A stretch of 63,846 nucleotides of DNA, the filler included, from Guillardia theta CCMP2712 (Eukaryota > Protista > Cryptophyta), in assembly GCF_000315625.1 (NCBI RefSeq). It is 6 parts of 6 records of this genome, joined end to end, with 100 filler letters (N's around TTAATTAATTAA, not from the genome) between each part and the next. Parts side by side here need not be neighbours in the genome. Positions count along the whole stretch, not along the records: positions 26,058 to 51,210 come from NW_005434376.1; 5 more parts are not named here. The stretch is one strand, 5' to 3'. Every line of letters starts with the position of its first letter. Position 1 is the stretch's first letter. A model generated the notes under the pieces. That model ran no database searches. It saw nothing but the letters and a program-made list of their open reading frames with translations, and was not told the origin of the DNA. Below are positions 30,940 to 46,013 of this stretch, one piece after another. Made by a program: the position numbers and the translations under genes.

Positions 30940-31432
30940 ATGCTTTTCCTATTGATTGCTCTGAATGATGTTCAGGTATGCCAGCGCTGTTTGTTTTGTT
31001 TAGAATTGAGATCTTCTTTCATGGCAGAGGATTTCATGCGCGGCAAATGATCAGTATGCTGCAACCCAGGTTTGATCAAATCATTGTGCAGCTGACACGC
31101 TGCGATGTGAATCAATACTTTCGTTTGAACCTTACCATCTTCACTTGTGAAATCAGCATCTTTCACTCTCAAAGCATTGCGGTGTGATTTCGAAATCCGC
31201 ACCTGCTGTCAATCTCAATTGTGTTGTGTCAATGCTTCAACCTCCTTGACTCTTCTCTGCTGACTTGCTCTCTGTAAAGGTCGTTGATGACGATGAAGAT
31301 GAAGAAGAGCTTGATAAACCTCCATCTGTTCATGACGACATGAGCGATAAAGGAAACGAGAAAACACGAAAAGATCCGCCTCATGTAGAACAGACGCCAA
31401 GAAAAGAGCAGAAGGTATGAGGCGATGATGGA

Positions 31433-31467
<35 letters not shown>

Positions 31468-32286
31468 CGACGACGATGACAATGACGACGACGACGATGC
31501 TATTCTTGTCATTGTTGTCATAGTCACCGTCTTTGTCGTATTGATGACACAAAGTGGTCTATGACAATCATGTGATAGTGATGCCGAGCGAATAACATTT
31601 CTTTTCTGCTCTTCGTCAAACAGGTTGACGACGTCGAGTTTGACCCGGAGGAGTTTGAAGGCTTCGAGCAAGCAGCTCCCAAGGCAGACGACCAGCAAGC
31701 AGAGTTGAACAGAAGGATGGAAGAGGCGAGGCGAAGGATGGCGATGATGAAAAAGAAGGTGAGGGCGGGGGAGGGAGAGGAAGATCTTCTTGCTGCGGAA
31801 GGTATGGCTCTGACTGCTCTGCTAGGAACTCTGGGAGTATTACCCTGAGATGATTGCTGGATTGATTGTGTTGGTGTACGTTCTGAATTACGTCCGAGGA
31901 AGGTTGGTTCCCTGTCGACTTCGATCTCGTACTTTTCACTTGCTGTGTTGTTGATTCTTGTCTTGCTGCCAGTTCGAAGAACAGGCAAATCGCCAACGGC
32001 TGGTTATCTGTCTGTATCAACAGGTTGCAAGACAACTTTGCGCTGGTACGTGCAGTCATCGACAGTCGTTCCTACTTGTCAAGCTGTCAGTTTCTTCGTT
32101 CATGTCATCACTGAACATGACAACACCTCCTCGTCATCACGTCGCATCCTCCTCCTCCTCCTCCTCCTCCTCCTCCTCCTCCTCCTCCTCCTCCTCCTCC
32201 TCCTCCAATACCACCACCACCACCACTTTCTCCTCCTCCTCCTCCTCCTCCTCCTCCTCCCCCTCCAGTACCATCACCACTATCAC

Positions 32287-32376: not shown

Positions 32377-35236
32377 TATCATCGTCATTTGCCTCTATGC
32401 TCTTCCTGCTCGTCCTCCTCCTTGCCGTCATTCACCATCACCTACCAACAACCATCTCCTGCTGCTCCTCCTGCACTACCAACACCACCATCTCGTTATT
32501 CACCGCCACCACCTCCCCCTCGTCCACCACCACCTCCACCACCTCCACCACCACCACCACCACCACCACCACCTCCTCCTCCTCCTCTCCCTCTTCCCGC
32601 AAGCCTGTGAGAGTCCTCGTGGCAGGTTGGGAAGGACAACGATGAGGTCCTGGTGAGAGACAGCGCCTGCCATTACACGATGTACTGCAGGTATGGAAAG
32701 GGCAGGGAAGCGAAGCGATGGGATGGGATGGGATGGGATGGGATGGGTTGGGGAGAGGAGGGAAGGGAAGGAGGGGAATGGAGGGAAGAGGAAGAGAAAG
32801 AGGGGCAGGGAGGGAAGGGGAGAGGAAGAGGGAGAAGCGAACAGGAGAGGATGGGGAGAGAACGAAGAAGAGGCAGAGGGAGAGAGGGAGGAGGGACAAT
32901 ATTGGTCGTACGGGCTAAGGGAGGGAGGAGGGAGGGAGAGACAGGAGCTGACTAGCGTGTAGCGGAAGGGTTAACTGCGAAAGCGTTTCAATCTCTCTCG
33001 ATCTTAAACCCAGGTGCTTCTCCTCCTCCTCCCCCCTGCTCCTGCTCCTGCTGCTCCTGCTGCTCCTCCTTCGTCCTCCTGCTTCTTTTTCCTCCTCCTG
33101 CTCCTTTTGTGCTCGTGCTCGTGCTCGTGCTCGTGCTTGTGATCCTCCTCGCTCCTCTCCTCCTCTCTCACATCCAGCAGGCAGGACCTCTTCTCCCTCC
33201 TCTGGGAAGTCTTTCAGCCTTTCGGGAGCGCAAAGTGGGAGGACACGGTGACGGTGGACGTGATGCTGGGCAGCGAAGGAGAGACGGGGGGGATGAAAGA
33301 GAAGTTCACTCTCGCAGTGCTGCAGAAGAGCTCTGAGAGCAAGGTGAGGAACGTGAGGAAGAACAGAAGCAGCTCAAGGAGGAGGAAGCGGGGGCGGGGG
33401 GCGGGGGGCGGGAGAAGGCGGAGGAGGAGGGGCAGGAGCAGATGTAGATGTGATTGTAGAGTTGTAGACCTTGAACATCTCACTTTTGCTCTGCCTCTCA
33501 GGTGAGATCTGAAAATAATGATCTCGAGAGTGCAATGGTCAGGCGATGGAAGACGACATTGCATGACTCCTTCTCCTGCATCGCCGACGACGAGGAGATC
33601 CCAGTGGACCTTATACCTGATGTGGTGCGATACAAGTTGTGTCCTCGCCTGTCCTCTGCTCTGCTCTGCTCTGCTCTGCTCTCCCCTCTCCTCCTTCTCT
33701 GCTCTGCTCTGCTCTGCTCTGCTCTGCTCTGCTTTCCCCTCCTCTCTGCTCTGCTCTGCTCTGCTCTGCTCCCCTTGCGCCCATTCACATCTCATATCAC
33801 CTCATTGATCGGCGTCGCAAAGTCTCATTACATGTCTTCGACCATGACAGGTTGCAAACACCCTCAACGACCACCGGCAGTACATCCGCCTCATCCACTT
33901 CTCCGACAAGATGATCGTGGGTCCCATCAACCAGCGCGAGCAAAGATCGTGCTTGAGGTTTTCCTTCTTCCTCCTCCCCGATGATCGACACGCGGCCAAG
34001 GTCAAGTAGAGGAGGGAGGAGGAGGAGAGGTACAGGAGAGTGCAGGGGAGGAGAGAGGAGGGGAGGGGAGTGTGAAGAGATGTGAAGGAATTAGGAGCAG
34101 CAGCAAGAGGGAGACAGAAGAGTTGGGCTCTGTGGTAGTGGGATAGGAGAGAGGACAGAGGAAATCAAGGACGGGGATGGGGACGTGAGGAGAGGGGGAG
34201 GAGGAGGAGGAGGAGGAGGAGGAGGAGGGAGGGAGGGATCATGGAGGAGGATGGAAGGGGAGGAGGAGGGAGGTGGAGAGAGGAGAAGGTGGGGAGTGGA
34301 GGGGAAAGAGAAGGAGGATGGAGGGGGGAGGGAATCGAGTGGACGCTGACAAACTGTCCGTCAGGATGGAGGAAAAAGCAAGTCGGACATGGAGAAATTG
34401 AGAACCTCGGAAATTCTCCTCGAAATCTCTTTTGTCTCTACTCCCGGCNNNNNNNNNNNNNNNNNNNNNNNNNNNNNNNNNNNNNNNNNNNNNNNNNNNN
34501 NNNNNNNNNNNNNNNNNNNNNNNNNNNNNNNNNNNNNNNNNNNNNNNNNNNNNNNNNNNNNNNNNNNNNNNNNNNNNNNNNNNNNNNNNNNNNNNNNNNN
34601 NNNNNNNNNNNNNNNNNNNNNNNNNNNNNNNNNNNNNNNNNNNNNNNNNNNNNNNNNNNNNNNNNNNNNNNNNNNNNNNNNNNNNNNNNNNNNNNNNNNN
34701 NNNNNNNNNNNNNNNNNNNNNNNNNNNNNNNNNNNNNNNNNNNNNNNNNNNNNNNNNNNNNNNNNNNNNNNNNNNNNNNNNNNNNNNNNNNNNNNNNNNN
34801 NNNNNNNNNNNNNNNNNNNNNNNNNNNNNNNNNNNNNNNNNNNNNNNNNNNNNNNNNNNNNNNNNNNNNNNNNNNNNNNNNNNNNNNNNNNNNNNNNNNN
34901 NNNNNNNNNNNNNNNNNNNNNNNNNNNNNNNNNNNNNNNNNNNNNNNNNNNNNNNNNNNNNNNNNNNNNNNNNNNNNNNNNNNNNNNNNNNNNNCCCTCC
35001 TCTCCTCTCCTCTCCTTCCTCCCTCCTCCTCCTCTCCCTCTCCTCTCTCCTCCTCCTCCTCTCCTCTCCTCTCCTCTCCTCTCTCCTCTCTCCTCTCTCC
35101 TCTCCTCTCCTCTCCTCTCCTCTCCTCCCCTCCCCTCCCCTCTAACTCCACGTGTCAGTTGGCCGCCAAGTTCGAGCAGAAGCTTCTCAAGAAGCAGCAG
35201 AAGAAGTCCATGCCCATCAAGATGAAGATGAAGTAG
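30940..35236 (+). CDS. CCDC47: CCDC47/DUF1682 ER membrane protein (PAT complex subunit); start uncertain, spans a gap
   Basis: Acidic N-terminus (FDPEEFEGF), TM EMIAGLIVLVYVLNYVRG, KNRQIANGW...LQDNFAL, QDLFSLL, IRLIHFSD, basic tail KFEQKLLKKQQKKSMPIKMKMK*. Confidence 0.85.
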
Positions 35237-35929: not shown

Positions 35930-36965
35930 AAAGTGGGTAGGGTTGGGCCAACTAATCCATGGACAGCGTGGGGTACTTAAAGGAGAAATAGGGGGTACTT
36001 CATGGTCAATAGGGGGGTACACTGATCATGACCCGATGGTAAACGCATGTAGGGAAGGGAGGTGGTATGAAAAGGGACCCAGTACCCTAGAAATAGAAGG
36101 GAATTAATGGGGTACTGCGATCAGATCATTTTGCAAGAGTTTGATTTGCTGTTTGGTCCTATCAAGGTCCTATCAGACATCGTATGAGATAGGGAGCCGA
36201 TAATTCATGGGACAACAGGGTACCCACCTATGTGTTCGACCTTGGTATTGACGGTAGGGTAATGTGAAGGGTGGGTAGTAATCATTACCACGGGTGTCAT
36301 TAAGAAAATTTGTTGTTACGTCAGGGTGGGTACATTCACAAAGGGGGTAGGGGTTACACCAAGGAGTACTGTGGGCGGGTAGGGTTGGCAGAGAAGAAGG
36401 TTGACCTAGGTTTCGGTCCTAGGAAAATTGTATGGAAGTGACAAGGAGAGTGAGCAATAGTAGGGCGGGGTGGTAATCCGTAGATCGCAGGGGTGTGTGT
36501 GGGCTCATATTCAACTCTTCTAGGGTGGTGGGGTACTTTCAATTATCACGAGCTAGGGTACCAAAGAGGTAAACTTTTTCGGAGTGGGTGGGGGGGGGTA
36601 GTACCCTACCCCATAACACCATTCAGAGGCAGTGCACTGGAACATCGCATGAGAAGGGTGGAGGTAGGAACAGGTGTAGCATAGGGGTACCGTAAAATGG
36701 AGGGGTAGGGTAGTCTTGTAACCGGTGATTATGTAGGAATAGAATGGGGTGAAGACGAGATACAGTGACAGGGTGTTGCATTGGGTAGGGTACTCCATGA
36801 CTACAGGGTAGGGGTACTCGAGATGGGTGGGGGGGTTCAGATGTAGGTCAGAAGAGGATAGGACCAGAGGGAACCTGAGTTGACAGTCAGAGGTGGGGGT
36901 CATTTGGGGGAAAATTGAGGGGTTGTATATCTGAGGGTGGGTAGAGACAGGGGGAAAGGGGGGTG
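35930..36965 (+). promoter_or_regulatory. GGGGTA(C)/GGGTAG motif-rich upstream region of the AP2 gene
   Basis: Many strand-biased copies, no convincing ORF; regulatory role is inferred. Confidence 0.4.
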
Positions 36966-42329: not shown

Positions 42330-43265
42330 CTACCCACCCACACTTTTACCCACTCAACAAGAAACACCCGTGCTTCTTATTACCCCTACCTCATCCGAAA
42401 TTACCCCACCCCGATTGTTGTATATAATCAAAATGATACCCTCTAATTTATATCAGGATACCCCTACTTTGTACATCATTGAAACTTTTTTCAAAAGACT
42501 ACCCCCCAATAAATGGAGTAGTTTTTGCAAAACCCCACCCATGAACATGATTACCCACCCTAATTTCACCCCACCCTCCAGCATTGTGATACAATCCTCT
42601 TGAGCCTGGAACCCTACACCCCACCTCATCACTTCCTGTACCCTACCCACTGCATGACCTCTTGTTGAATATAACCCCTCATTCATAATTTATCACCGGT
42701 ACCCAGAAAACTATTACCCTCATTTATAAGCACAAAAGTACCGGTTATTCTATTTCAAATTTCCCACATGGTGGGTTATCTAAATTTCTTCACCCGTCAC
42801 TTGGAACCCCCTACGCACTCTTCGTTGTTAAATGTACCCCTACCCCCTTGGCGTCTCCTCATACCCCTCGACGGCCCTCGAGTAGGGAATCAACCAGACC
42901 TTTCACTACCCTACCCCCCTCATCCATAGTACCCCTGATTTAACACCCCCTACCCCCAGTAAACCCTACTTCTAACCACCCTGATCCATTCACCCCATCA
43001 AATGTTCAATTGCTTACGTACTCACCCTATGATTTACAGTCATATGACCCGGTACTTATATACATAACCCACCCCATGAAGAAAACTGGAAACACCACCT
43101 TGGTTCCCAGCCCTGAATCTGTCACCACCACCATACCACATGACCACCTACCCCCCTTCCACGGCGATTTACTTTACGTTTCAAGGGACCACCACGTGTT
43201 TTGAGCATCAACAAGGGGGTACATCATTATGGATTGGGTGGGTAGTCATGGTGGGGTAGTGAGGT
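42330..43265 (-). promoter_or_regulatory. (G)TACCCC-rich intergenic tract (GGGGTA on the minus strand)
   Basis: Dense TACCCC/ACCCAC copies on the plus strand; mirror of the pattern at 43500-43760. Confidence 0.35.
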
Positions 43266-43792
43266 AGTGACGTTCGCATTTTTTTTTCGATCGGCGCCAT
43301 GCATAGCCTCAGTAACTTGGTCATATCGGCTTCCCGGGCCCGGCCCGGCTGGTCATCCGGCGCCGGGCCCGAGCTTCGGAGTGAAGTCAGCTCAGTCATG
43401 ATTTACTACTACACCCACACGCAGAGGTCTAGCTGCTTGCTTCACTAATTTTAGTATGATAAATTAAAGTTAACTAAATAATAATAGTGGCTTAAAAATG
43501 GGTGTGGGGTGATGGATAGCTTGCAGCATGGCGAGTCCTTTTGCAAGAGGTGGCTGGGGTACTGTCACCAGTGGAACTTTGAAATGTAGGGTAGGGGTAC
43601 TTGAAATTACACAGAATCTTAATGTGGGTGCATAATGTATTGATTATTGGTGGGTACTTGCGGCTATATATGGAGGTACCAGAAAAACAATGCTTCCAAT
43701 TTATGGGTGGGGGTACTAATTTCGGGGGTACTTTCATTCAAGATGCTGGAGGTGGGGGGGGTGGGCGTCAGCCTGTTGTTCGGGGGCAGACG

Positions 43793-44765
43793 ATGGCGGG
43801 AGAGTGGCGAGTACTGGCGGTGCTCGCTACCGTCTTCCTCATCGATGGGTACAGGAGGTACACGAGTAGTCAGGCCGAGGAGAAGGAGAAGGCAGTCAGC
43901 GAGCAGGAGCTCGACCCCTCCTTCCGGTTCAAGGACCACGAAGCCAATCGCCTCCACATCCTGTATTGCCAGGCAGGGTGAGGCTACAAGAAGGCTGTAG
44001 TGGAGTACTCCAACTACCTACAGCACAGGCTCCCTGGCCTAAAGATAACTTCGGAGGAGAACGATGCTCCCGCTCATCTTCGGGCGCTTGCCTCGATGGT
44101 CAGCTATGCTCAGATGGCGGGATTTGCCGTTGCCTTCTTTGGCACGCAGATGTTTGCTGCATTGAGTATGCCTGTACCGCAATGGGCGAATTACATGCAA
44201 GAAAACAAAGGAACTGCAATCATGGGATTCTTCCTTGGCAACATGGTGATCAGTGGCCTCATCGCGGTACTCTCCCTACTCTTCCTCCCTCGCTCCCTCC
44301 ACTCCTCCATCCATTCACCTCCTCGCCCTCCTCGCCCTCCCGGATGTTCCGTGCTTCTCTTCCCCCATCCTCGCTTTCCTTTTTTCCCCTTCCTTCATCC
44401 CTCCACCTCCCCGACTCCCCCCCCCCCCCAACCTCCCTTCCCTCGTTCTCTCTGTACATCCATCCCCCTCTCCCTCCTTCGCACTCTCTTCCTTCTCCTC
44501 TCGCCTTCTCCACTGCAAAACAACCTTCTTCATTGTCACAATCCCATGCTGTTACATGACCTGCTCCACACCATTCCGTGATGGCACTAGCGATGGTGTG
44601 TCTCTCATTCTCATTCCTTCTTGGCAGACAAACGCGTTCGAGGTGTACTTGGGCGGCGAGCTTGTCCATTCCAAGATCAAGACGGGAGTCTTGCCTGACA
44701 TCCATTGGTTGGTCAAGGAGCTTGTATCAAGAAATCCTGCTCTTGATCAAGCTGTTCCGAAATGA
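43793..44765 (+). CDS. SELENOT: Selenoprotein T-like (Rdx family), Sec at in-frame TGA 43979-43981; intron 44267-44627; about 203 aa
   Basis: Signal peptide, LYCQAG-U-GYKK, in-frame continuation past the TGA, hydrophobic middle, FFLGNM, TNAFEVYLGGELVHSKIKTGVLP; SECIS downstream. Confidence 0.93.
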
Positions 44766-44786
44766 GCGAGACGATGTGGAAGATTG

Positions 44787-44852
44787 CACCGGCAATGACG
44801 AGAATGGGCGAAAACCTTGAGGGGCCCGTTTTCTGAGACTGACTTCGCGGTG
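44787..44852 (+). promoter_or_regulatory. Eukaryotic type II SECIS element
   Basis: ATGAC (44795) / TGAG core; helix GAGAATGGGC pairs with GCCCGTTTTC; unpaired AAAA then mini-stem CCT-TG-AGG; lower helix CACCG/CGGTG. Confidence 0.92.
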
Positions 44853-44934
44853 GAAGCTTTTACTGACACCTTGCTCATTCCATAAGAATGAAGAAAGAGA
44901 AATCAATGAGCATGTCGGGGTGCGAGCAGCAGTG

Positions 44935-45831
44935 CTAGCTACGATGGAAGAACACGTCCCTGAAGTTTGCGACGATGCTCCCCTTGCTGTAATCCTTAAT
45001 CTCCTCCTCGCTCTTCTTCACTCCGAGCAACGGTGCCACTCTGTTCCTGTAGAACTCGATGGTCGTCTGGTTCGTGGCGATCAGCAGCAGGTGCCATCCG
45101 CCCAGGATGCACATGAAGAGGAAAATGCAGAGGGCAGGGAGGAATATGAACGATCGCTTCCCCATTTCTATACACTTGTCCAGCTCCAACGGAGTGAGCT
45201 TTTCCACCCCGTACAGGTACCCCGTCCACACGCAAACACTGAAGGAGGAAAAGCTGATCGCGCTGCCGTACCCGCTCCCCAGCCAAACTCCAGCTAACCA
45301 GAGAAAGAAGTAGCCATGGTTGCGCAGCCCGACACAGCAGTTGGTGAAGGGGCAGTGGTGGTCCATCCTCAGGACGCAGTGTCCGCACACCGAGCAATGG
45401 TGTGATCGCTCCGGTCGAACGAGCTTGCAAGTCTTGCAGAGTCTCCCGTGCGGCTCATCGCTGTTCCCCTTGACAACATAGCCAGGGCTAACCAGGAGCG
45501 TCAGCCCGTACATGCACTCGACGGCGACGAACAGCAGCGAGCACATGCTGATCTCTACCCACCACCGCGTGCTGTACGCCTCGACGTCGAGGAAGCGGAG
45601 CATGTCGCCCTGGAAGTAGAGAGCGAACGCTGGGATGGCGATGCTCAGCGATACGAGGATGCGGGAAACAACCGTGTTGGTGAAGGAACGGACCTGCCTT
45701 GACAGCCTGCGGACATTGGAGGTGACGAGGGAGTCTGGAAGGAACAAGACCAAGAGGTTGGCGAGGAGGTCAGGAATGAGCGGGAGCATGGCGAGGCCCA
45801 CGGTGAAGATGGCGATGTCGACGATGTCCAT
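44935..45831 (-). CDS. DHHC palmitoyltransferase
   Basis: CKTCKLVRPERSHHCSVCGHCVLRMDHHCPFTNCCVGLRNHGYFF, NQTTIE, YSKG..ANF; TM helices; first in-frame ATG at 45831. Confidence 0.93.
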   Translation of the reverse strand: MDIVDIAIFTVGLAMLPLIPDLLANLLVLFLPDSLVTSNVRRLSRQVRSFTNTVVSRILVSLSIAIPAFALYFQGDMLRFLDVEAYSTRWWVEISMCSLLFVAVECMYGLTLLVSPGYVVKGNSDEPHGRLCKTCKLVRPERSHHCSVCGHCVLRMDHHCPFTNCCVGLRNHGYFFLWLAGVWLGSGYGSAISFSSFSVCVWTGYLYGVEKLTPLELDKCIEMGKRSFIFLPALCIFLFMCILGGWHLLLIATNQTTIEFYRNRVAPLLGVKKSEEEIKDYSKGSIVANFRDVFFHRS

Positions 45832-45967
45832 CCTTGAGATCGGGGGCAAGGGGATGGAGAATTCTGCGAGGTGGGGAACGGTGTGGGGGACTGTGGATGG
45901 AGCAGGGGCAGGAGCAGGGGCAGGAGCAGGGGCAGGAGCAGGGGCAGGAGCAGGGGCAGGAGCAGGG

Positions 45968-46013
<46 letters not shown>

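What the first reader, a model, noticed from the sequence alone, without database searches (positions are those of the whole stretch)
43793..44852. Selenoprotein T split by its UGA codon, with a type II SECIS
Seen: ORF 43601-43981 ends at TGA, but the frame continues GYKKAVVEY... into ORF 44000, and a full SECIS hairpin starts about 20-30 nt after the true stop. Established: UGA plus a 3'UTR SECIS directs selenocysteine insertion. The TGA sits in GGGTGAGG, which mimics a splice donor, so gene predictors could easily mis-model this locus.
Basis: partly seen in the sequence, partly recalled or inferred. Interest (0 to 1): 0.8.

Follow-up and report, generated by a model that had tools for sequence, protein, structure and literature searches.

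The report
Guillardia selenoprotein T gene, mis-annotated
This is an ordinary, expressed selenoprotein T gene of the alga Guillardia theta whose selenocysteine (UGA) codon the public annotation removed with an invented intron; its only unusual feature is one extra residue in the redox motif (C-x-x-x-U, not C-x-x-U).

Summary
The piece is Guillardia theta CCMP2712 nuclear DNA. The locus is GUITHDRAFT_122252, which UniRef names "Selenoprotein T".

The real gene:
- Start ATG at 43793 and in-frame TGA (Sec63) at 43979-43981.
- One real intron, 44267-44627 (361 nt, GT..AG), and stop at 44763-44765.
- SECIS at about 44776-44863, with AUGA at 44795 and GA at 44835.
- Poly(A) site at 44906. The product is 203 aa.

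Three transcriptome assemblies cross the TGA without a gap. They and raw RNA reads show the 361-nt intron, and raw reads carry A-tails at 44906, downstream of the SECIS.

Ten related loci keep TGA at the same codon followed by GYK[KR]AV[MV]EY. Four of them show SECIS elements of matching architecture, with compensatory helix changes.

SelT is a known, widespread algal selenoprotein, and a G. theta selenoproteome of 14 proteins is published, so this is essentially known.

One small surprise: G. theta has C-Q-A-G-U, while all 20 comparable relatives have C-x-x-U or C-x-x-C. "Type II" SECIS is supported by homology, but in G. theta itself it is thermodynamically marginal.

The parts
43788..43792 (+). 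Short 5' UTR; the most upstream transcript contig starts at 43788
   Evidence: table 8: X9 record 4 spans 43788-44265 and 44627-44938. Read depth is zero over 43635-43768.
43793..44266 (+). Exon 1 coding part: Met1 to Ala158, including Sec63
   Evidence: The N-terminus MAGEWRVLAVLATVFLIDGY parallels MDWRIIAVLSAVFLYDAF of relative L001.
43979..43981 (+). In-frame TGA, the selenocysteine codon 63, in the motif C59-Q-A-G-U63-G-Y-K-K
   Evidence: TGA sits at the same codon in 10 related loci. It is retained in mRNA contigs.
43978..44028 (+). False 51-nt 'intron' of the public gene model GUITHDRAFT_122252. It is not spliced in the RNA data and removes the Sec codon plus 16 codons.
   Evidence: Only this GT..AG interval reproduces the 186-aa GenBank protein P0005. 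No joint appears here in four RNA runs.
44267..44627 (+). The real intron: 361 nt, GT..AG, pyrimidine-rich, phase 0
   Evidence: table 5: the joint 'skips 361, GT..AG' appears in X5, X9 and X13 contigs and in X24 raw reads. MMETSP peptide P0002 reads ...GLIATNAFEV... across it.
44628..44765 (+). Exon 2 coding part (TNAFEVYLGGELVHSKIKTGVLPD...VPK) with stop TGA at 44763-44765
   Evidence: Pfam Rdx PF10262 scores 23.1 bits against a cut-off of 22.6.
44776..44863 (+). SECIS element. Helix I: 44776-44791 with 44848-44863. AUGA: 44795-44798. Helix II: 44800-44809 with 44824-44833 (10 bp). Apical loop GAAAACCUUGAGGG: 44810-44823. GA: 44835-44836.
   Evidence: Rfam RF00031 gives 26.4 bits. Supporting results: constrained fold; pattern unique in the piece; best hit of a model built from relatives' SECIS; same architecture in L003, L009, L010 and L002.
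44766..44906 (+). 3' UTR (141 nt) ending at the poly(A) site 44906
   Evidence: table 7: 5 reads carry an untemplated A-run behind 44906. Depth peaks over 44640-44907 in the RNA run X24, which looks 3'-biased from this depth profile (my inference).
44935..45849 (-). Neighbouring convergent gene, a DHHC palmitoyltransferase. It is not part of the selenoprotein gene, but its 3' end must overlap the SelT 3' UTR.
   Evidence: Pfam PF01529 scores 115 bits. Contigs X5 and X13 run from SelT into it, and a few antisense reads lie over 44707-44840.

Best explanation
This is the nuclear gene for selenoprotein T (SELENOT, Rdx / thioredoxin-like family) of the cryptophyte alga Guillardia theta.

The gene has two exons and gives an mRNA of about 760 nt that keeps an in-frame UGA at codon 63. 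A SECIS stem-loop lies in the 141-nt 3' UTR, with its AUGA 452 nt downstream of the UGA in the mRNA. By the established eukaryotic mechanism it would bind SBP2 and recruit eEFSec with Sec-tRNA[Ser]Sec, so that the UGA is read as selenocysteine and a 203-aa protein is made.

The protein has three recognisable parts:
- an N-terminal hydrophobic signal or anchor;
- a Cys59 / Sec63 redox pair just after the first beta-strand;
- the SelT-specific hydrophobic insertion (residues ~99-160) inside the thioredoxin-like fold.

It is therefore most likely a membrane-associated (ER-type) thiol / selenol oxidoreductase that cycles through a selenenylsulfide.

Shown here: the gene structure, retention of the UGA in mRNA, splicing, the poly(A) site, conservation of the UGA and flanking peptide, and a SECIS-like structure shared with relatives.

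Inferred: actual Sec insertion, localisation and redox activity.

The public annotation is wrong at one point, a 51-nt false intron that deletes the Sec codon. The redox motif has one residue more (C-Q-A-G-U) than in all relatives examined.
For: Identity of the locus: exact cluster look-up gives XP_005818541.1 / EKX31561.1, GUITHDRAFT_122252, UniRef 'Selenoprotein T', Guillardia theta CCMP2712.

Family:
- Pfam Rdx on exon 2 and on relatives P0007 (34.8 bits) and P0006.
- phmmer finds 661 relatives at E<=1e-3, the best at 65% identity and E 1.3e-48.
- Atlas neighbours are Rdx / SelT-like.

UGA is coding:
- The frame stays open and conserved beyond it.
- All 10 related loci keep TGA at the same codon, followed by GYK[KR]AV[MV]EY.
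- Full-length family members carry Cys there, or W where TGA was translated as Trp.

RNA:
- Contigs of three runs cross 43860-44265 with 0 differences and 0 gaps.
- The intron 44267-44627 is spliced in all four runs.
- A-tails sit at 44906.

SECIS:
- Rfam gives 26.4 bits at the expected place.
- My pattern is unique in 50 kb of sequence, against 0.045 expected.
- Relatives L003, L009 (Rfam 32.2 bits), L010 and L002 have the same layout: AUGA, one mismatched C, a 10-bp helix II, an A-rich bulge and (C/U)GAG.
- Six of 10 helix II pairs differ by double compensatory changes between G. theta and L003. Three of 10 do so between L003 and L009.
- A model built only from L003 and L009 ranks 44787-44850 first in the piece.

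Sec use in the organism: 14 selenoproteins in 12 families are reported for G. theta, and SELENOT is among the most widespread algal selenoproteins (PMC7539508).
Against: - There is no protein-level evidence (75Se labelling or mass spectrometry).
- The Rfam score is below the gathering threshold (26.4 against 35), because helix I is displaced by an 11-nt 3' internal loop.
- Unconstrained folding of the 3' UTR is not better than shuffles (z -1.44).
- The model built from relatives scores only 13.3 bits, E about 0.1.
- The C-x-x-x-U spacing departs from the family's C-x-x-U, so normal redox function is not certain.
- Raw-read depth over the TGA is low (about 1.8x in X24). Contigs cannot exclude a rare isoform that uses the 51-nt splice.
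- tRNA-Sec, eEFSec and SBP2 of G. theta could not be examined with these tools. No tRNA lies in the piece.
Confidence: 0.93

Rival explanations
1. The public gene model is right: a 51-nt intron (43978-44028) removes the TGA, and the cell makes a 186-aa SelT-like protein without Sec, reading ...CQAG-LPGLK...
For: GT..AG boundaries exist, with a good GTGAGG donor. Removing the interval keeps the frame and reproduces the GenBank protein exactly.
Against: - No joint appears at 43977/44029 in any of four RNA runs, whereas the real 361-nt intron is seen in all four.
- Contigs with depths of 11, 53 and 311 are colinear with the genome there.
- The 'intron' encodes the most conserved peptide of the family, U-GYKKAVVEY, which is kept in frame in 10 relatives.
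- A SECIS would then have no purpose.
- A rare minor isoform cannot be excluded from contigs.
Confidence: 0.03
2. The UGA is a genuine stop, as in a decaying or truncated gene. Only a 62-aa N-terminal peptide is made, and the downstream frame and hairpin are relics.
For: The redox motif has an unusual one-residue insertion, which could be a sign of relaxed constraint. The SECIS scores below Rfam's threshold.
Against: - The downstream frame is intact across a spliced intron for 140 codons and is 52-65% identical to relatives.
- The transcript is abundant in several independent studies.
- The SECIS core, helix II and A-rich loop are all intact.
- The TGA is the ancestral state in all relatives, not a new nonsense mutation.
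Confidence: 0.02
3. The UGA is read through, but by something other than Sec-tRNA, such as near-cognate Cys or Trp insertion. This would give a non-seleno SelT.
For: Nothing specific in the data. Some gene callers translated the homologous TGA as W in metagenomic relatives, but that is an artefact of the code table chosen.
Against: A SECIS lies in the 3' UTR. G. theta is reported to have 14 selenoproteins (PMC7539508). The same gene uses TGA as its real stop at 44763.
Confidence: 0.02

Closest known systems
Algal SELENOT (Jiang et al. 2020, 'The algal selenoproteomes', PMC7539508)
   Same: A Sec-containing SelT with a 3' UTR SECIS. It is listed among the four most widely distributed Sec proteins in 36 algal genomes. 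G. theta was analysed there (14 selenoproteins, 12 families), so this gene is very probably already in that catalogue.
   Different: The per-species family list is in a figure I could not read, so I could not confirm that SELENOT of G. theta is included. The C-x-x-x-U spacing and the false GenBank intron are not mentioned in the text I searched.
Kinetoplastid SelT (Lobanov et al. 2006, PMC1557815)
   Same: A distant SelT homologue in protists, with a CxxU redox motif and a predicted export signal. The genes were mis-annotated because of the in-frame UGA. Their SECIS elements were atypical and hard to detect with default models.
   Different: Those genes have no introns, and their models were split in two at the UGA rather than spliced around it. 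The UGA-SECIS distance is about 850 nt there and 452 nt here. Here the motif is C-x-x-x-U.
Mammalian SELENOT (ER thioredoxin-like oxidoreductase; motif C-V-S-U as I recall it, not checked here)
   Same: The overall layout is the same: a signal or anchor, a beta-strand followed by the Cys...Sec-G-Y-[KR] motif, a hydrophobic insertion inside the Rdx fold, and a C-terminal ...GAFE[IV]... segment.
   Different: There is one extra residue between Cys and Sec. The SECIS begins about 10-20 nt after the stop in a 141-nt 3' UTR. No experimental data exist for the algal protein.
SelW / SelH / Rdx12 (other Rdx-family proteins; Dikiy et al. 2007, cited in PMC7539508)
   Same: The same Pfam family (PF10262), with a CxxU/C motif at the start of helix 1.
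   Different: From my knowledge of the family, not tested here, these lack the roughly 65-residue hydrophobic insertion. In this protein and in P0007 that insertion stretches 121 residues over 56 profile positions. So this protein is SelT, not SelW or SelH.

Membership tests
Selenoprotein T (SELENOT), Rdx family PF10262 | Significant sequence similarity to the Rdx / SelT family | tested here: met
   - PF10262 scores 23.1 bits against a cut-off of 22.6 on the exon-2 peptide.
- Close relatives score 34.8 and 24.2 bits.
- There are 661 phmmer relatives.
- UniRef names the locus Selenoprotein T.
- Atlas neighbours are SelT-like clusters scoring 0.92-0.93.
Selenoprotein T (SELENOT), Rdx family PF10262 | Sec (or Cys) at the conserved redox position, preceded by a Cys and followed by G-Y-[KR] | tested here: met
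   The sequence reads ...LHILYC-QAG-U-GYKKAVVEY. The U column aligns with U, C or W of relatives.
Selenoprotein T (SELENOT), Rdx family PF10262 | Two-residue spacing of the redox pair (C-x-x-U or C-x-x-C) | tested here: not met
   G. theta has C-Q-A-G-U, three residues between Cys and Sec. All 10 read-through relatives (CSSU, CASU, CSGU, CQGU) and all 10 full-length representatives (CxxC or CxxW) have two. I treat the spacing as typical rather than defining, because descent from the family is shown by 52-65% identity over the whole length to relatives with the canonical motif.
Selenoprotein T (SELENOT), Rdx family PF10262 | SelT-specific hydrophobic insertion inside the thioredoxin-like fold, plus an N-terminal hydrophobic signal or anchor | tested here: met
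   Kyte-Doolittle peaks lie at residues 1-17, 99-128 and 140-162. In the relative P0007, the Rdx profile positions 18-73 are spread over 121 residues.
Eukaryotic SECIS element (Rfam RF00031) | The AUGA ... GA non-Watson-Crick quartet | tested here: met
   AUGA is at 44795-44798 and GA at 44835-44836. Both align to the model's AUGA and UGA.
Eukaryotic SECIS element (Rfam RF00031) | A helix II of about 9-13 bp leading to unpaired AA(R) in an apical loop or bulge | tested here: met
   There is a 10-bp helix after one C/U mismatch, and the loop starts GAAAA, 12 nt after AUGA.
Eukaryotic SECIS element (Rfam RF00031) | Score at or above Rfam's gathering threshold | tested here: not met
   The score is 26.4 bits against 35. 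The model's helix I is not formed at the expected register. A 14-bp helix I exists further out, with an 11-nt 3' internal loop. Relative L009 scores 32.2, and L002 and L003 are not detected at all, so the model is weak for this clade.
Eukaryotic SECIS element (Rfam RF00031) | Located in the 3' UTR of the mature mRNA of a gene with an in-frame UGA | tested here: met
   The stop is at 44765, the element spans 44776-44863 and the poly(A) site is at 44906.
Eukaryotic SECIS element (Rfam RF00031) | Type II form (an extra apical mini-stem, with AA in a bulge) | tested here: inconclusive
   Relatives fold with a 4-5 bp mini-stem (L003, L009, L010) or a long helix III (L002). In G. theta only CC/GG can pair, at -12.6 kcal/mol against -13.5 for the open loop.
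Eukaryotic SECIS element (Rfam RF00031) | Binds SBP2 and supports Sec insertion | not testable with these tools
   This needs a reporter or binding assay.
Sec-decoding organism | tRNA-Sec, eEFSec, SBP2, PSTK, SepSecS and SPS2 present in the genome | not testable with these tools
   Only 25 kb of the genome is on hand, and it holds no tRNA. Literature reports 14 selenoproteins in G. theta (PMC7539508) and says tRNA-Sec is retained in algae with secondary plastids (PMC13578239, not specific to G. theta in the text I read).

The most novel reading that the evidence does not exclude
The one-residue expansion of the redox motif (C-Q-A-G-U instead of C-x-x-U) may be a functional, selected variant of the Rdx active site. 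It would form a larger selenenylsulfide ring, with altered redox potential or substrate range. That would make G. theta SelT a natural experiment on how the spacing of a Cys/Sec pair tunes a thioredoxin-fold enzyme. The sequence fact itself is certain. The probability given is for the variant being catalytically competent and functionally distinct, rather than neutral or mildly deleterious.
Probability: 0.25. Interest if true: 0.4.

Novelty: already known. Interest (0 to 1): 0.25.

Why it matters
Practically, it corrects one public gene model. GUITHDRAFT_122252 / XP_005818541.1 should be 203 aa with Sec63, not 186 aa with an invented 51-nt intron. It also shows a failure mode that differs from the usual one: the predictor spliced around the UGA instead of truncating at it.

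The database searches show how widespread the general problem is. Most of the 150 best SelT relatives are 100-160 aa fragments that begin just after the Sec codon, or carry W at that position.

Biologically, it adds nothing new about Sec decoding. The only point of possible interest to selenoprotein specialists is the C-x-x-x-U motif, which could be tested biochemically.

Tried and rejected
- The PDB sequence search with the 95-aa piece gave only chance hits, E >= 0.36.
- Unconstrained RNA folding does not show the SECIS, because the quartet is non-canonical (z -1.44). I used constrained folding instead.
- Rfam did not detect SECIS elements in L002 or L003. I found them with a pattern scan of my own.
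- MAFFT alignments of the SECIS elements (A1, A4) were out of register by one column on the 3' arm. I therefore did not run the count of structure pairs and counted compensatory pairs by hand from the folds.
- The model R1 missed the G. theta element with default filters. With filters off it ranked the element first.
A 5-sequence one worked.
- P0004 is an MMETSP relative that is 92% identical, and I tried to learn whether it shares the C-x-x-x-U motif. No contig is on record for it, and a word search with the 62-aa N-terminal piece found nothing. That blank says little.
- The miRNA-like and snoRNA-like Rfam hits in the piece lie in or next to low-complexity microsatellite tracts, and I rejected them.
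- The two GGGGTAC-rich stretches share no longer similarity.
- I did not fold the protein. The tools take no read-through sequence, and the mis-modelled P0005 would be uninformative.

Full report
**What is in the sequence**

- On the + strand an ORF (43601-43981) ends at TGA 43979-43981.
- The same frame continues as GYKKAVVEYSNYLQHRLPGLK... into ORF 44000-44581.
- The first ATG compatible with the transcripts is 43793.
- The frame leaves exon 1 at GCG|GTACTC (44266/44267) and re-enters at TTGGCAG|ACAAAC (44627/44628), in phase 0. It ends at TGA 44763-44765.
- Joined, this gives 612 nt and 203 codons with a single internal TGA at codon 63.
- The context is ...LHILYC-QAG-U-GYKKAVVEY.

**Whose gene it is**

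- A word search with the 95-aa piece after the TGA found an MMETSP peptide identical to the spliced C-terminal 102 residues (P0002).
- Its cluster also holds XP_005818541.1 / EKX31561.1, 'hypothetical protein GUITHDRAFT_122252 [Guillardia theta CCMP2712]', which UniRef100 L1I5P3 names 'Selenoprotein T'.
- The window piece is therefore nuclear DNA of the cryptophyte alga Guillardia theta.
- That public protein has 186 aa and reads ...LYCQAG-LPGLK....
- The only way to obtain it from the DNA is to remove 43978-44028, a 51-nt GT..AG interval whose donor is the GTGAGG that contains the TGA.

**RNA evidence**

I laid four RNA data sets on 43300-45300.

- Transcriptome contigs from three runs (depths 311, 53 and 11) are colinear with the genome from 43788/43857/43860 to 44265, with 0 differing letters and 0 gaps. 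The TGA and the 'false intron' are thus present in mature RNA.
- All three contigs, and raw reads of a fourth run, skip 361 nt with GT..AG ends (44267-44627).
- Five raw reads carry an untemplated A-run immediately behind 44906. Depth in that run peaks over 44640-44907, which I take to mean a 3'-biased library.
- Polyadenylation is therefore about 40 nt downstream of the SECIS, not upstream of it.
- Caveats: contigs cannot exclude a rare isoform, and raw-read depth over the TGA is only about 1.8.

**Family**

- Pfam Rdx (PF10262) matches the exon-2 peptide just above its cut-off (23.1 against 22.6 bits).
- It matches the close relatives P0007 and P0006 more clearly (34.8 and 24.2 bits).
- In P0007, 56 profile positions are spread over 121 residues. 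This is the hydrophobic insertion that, as I know the family, marks SelT; SelW and SelH were not compared here.
- Hydropathy shows an N-terminal hydrophobic segment (residues 1-17) and two hydrophobic stretches (99-128 and 140-162).
- An exhaustive phmmer search gave 661 relatives at E<=1e-3, the best at 65% identity and E 1.3e-48.
- ESM Atlas neighbours are 'Rdx family' and 'SelT-like protein' clusters.

**Conservation of the UGA**

- I fetched DNA for ten related genes from metagenomes, metatranscriptomes and Logan assemblies (L001-L010) and read them through with the break marked.
- All ten have TGA at the same codon, preceded by a beta-strand-like [LMI]H[IF]x[YF]C and followed by GYK[KR]AVMEY.
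- Full-length family representatives have Cys at that column, or W where a caller used a TGA=Trp table.
- This is the classical comparative signature of a Sec codon.

**The SECIS**

- Rfam SECIS_1 matches 44786-44846 at 26.4 bits. E is 0.034 in 3 kb and 0.28 in the 25-kb piece, below the gathering score of 35.

Anatomy:
- AUGA is at 44795-44798, followed by one C opposite a U.
- Helix II is 10 bp, GAGAAUGGGC with GCCCGUUUUC.
- The apical loop is 14 nt, GAAAACCUUGAGGG.
- GA is at 44835-44836.
- Helix I is composite and 14 bp long (44776-44791 with 44848-44863). It is reached through an 11-nt 3' internal loop, which explains the low Rfam score.

Evidence that it is more than chance:
- A simple pattern (AUGA, at least 9 bp, AA at the loop start, GA) occurs once on both strands of the piece, here. 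Shuffles give 0.045 expected.
- Relatives have the same layout. L003 and L009 read AUGA-C, 10 bp, AGAAACC, a CCAU/AUGG mini-stem, then CGAG. L009 scores 32.2 bits in Rfam.
- L010 was found by a model built from L003 and L009. L002 has a GAAAAA bulge and a long helix III.
- Six of the ten helix II pairs differ on both sides between G. theta and L003 while staying paired. Three do so between L003 and L009.
- With filters off, the relatives' model ranks 44787-44850 first in the whole piece, though only at 13.3 bits and E about 0.1.

On 'type II':
- The relatives clearly fold with an apical mini-stem.
- In G. theta only two C-G pairs can form, and the open loop is about 1 kcal/mol more stable.
- The label therefore holds by homology but is marginal for this copy.

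**Sec machinery**

- The 25-kb piece has no tRNA, and the rest of the genome is not on hand.
- Jiang et al. 2020 (PMC7539508) report 14 selenoproteins in 12 families for G. theta. [quoted passage not shown]
- A 2026 review states that tRNA-Sec is retained in algae with secondary plastids (PMC13578239).
- I could not read the figure that lists the families per species, so I rate inclusion of this very gene in that catalogue as probable, not shown.

**The one unusual feature**

- G. theta has C-Q-A-G-U, three residues between Cys and Sec.
- All ten read-through relatives have two: CSSU; CASU six times (L002 and L004-L008, one clade); CSGU twice; CQGU once.
- All ten full-length representatives in which the motif is visible (CxxC or CxxW) also have two.
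- L010's C-Q-G-U suggests a 3-nt insertion (GCA) into such a motif.
- The three extra bases are in the transcripts as well (0 differences).
- A paper search for 'CxxxU' found the term only for SelK, not SelT.
- Whether the wider ring still cycles as a selenenylsulfide is unknown.
- I could not establish whether the sister taxon (P0004, 92% identical) shares it.

**Verdict**

- This is a known kind of gene in an organism with a published selenoproteome, at a locus already named SelT in UniRef.
- Interest is low to modest.

Noticed in passing
window 35970-36817 and 42834-43731: The heptamer GGGGTAC occurs 16 times in the window against about 2 expected (0 of 100 shuffles reach 16). Fourteen of the copies lie in two stretches. 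The second ends about 60 nt upstream of the SelT start codon. The two stretches share no longer similarity. It could be a promoter-type motif or a decayed repeat.
   Followed up: partly
window 44935-45849 (-) and 44707-44940: A convergent DHHC palmitoyltransferase gene (Pfam PF01529, 115 bits) has its stop codon only 29 nt from the SelT poly(A) site. Two transcriptome assemblies fuse the two genes into one contig. A few antisense reads lie over the SECIS region. The 3' UTRs must therefore overlap in antisense.
   Followed up: partly
window 45899-46013: A near-perfect (GGAGCA)19 / 12-mer microsatellite lies just upstream of the DHHC ORF. The whole piece is rich in purine- or pyrimidine-only microsatellites. 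Most of the weak miRNA-like and snoRNA-like Rfam hits (for example 31430-31540 and 32916-33086) fall in or next to such tracts and are not RNA genes.
   Followed up: partly
database relatives P0006-P0154: Most of the 150 best SelT relatives in the 1.8-billion-protein library are 100-160 aa fragments that begin just after the Sec codon. Several full-length ones show W at the Sec position (CTSW, CVAW), meaning TGA was translated as Trp. SelT is systematically mis-called in public gene sets.
   Followed up: partly
L010 (Ga0307489_10089159), upstream of 483: This relative has C-Q-G-U. The G. theta C-Q-A-G-U looks like the same motif with a 3-nt insertion, which suggests how the odd spacing arose.
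   Followed up: no
runs X9, X10, X19 ('organism C') and X20 (freshwater metagenome): Runs under a third organism label (C) hold part of this G. theta stretch, and the X9 contigs laid on it match with no differences. A freshwater metagenome holds a fifth of its words. Possible causes are prey or kleptoplast material, a label variant, or a close relative. Names are coded, so this could not be resolved.
   Followed up: no
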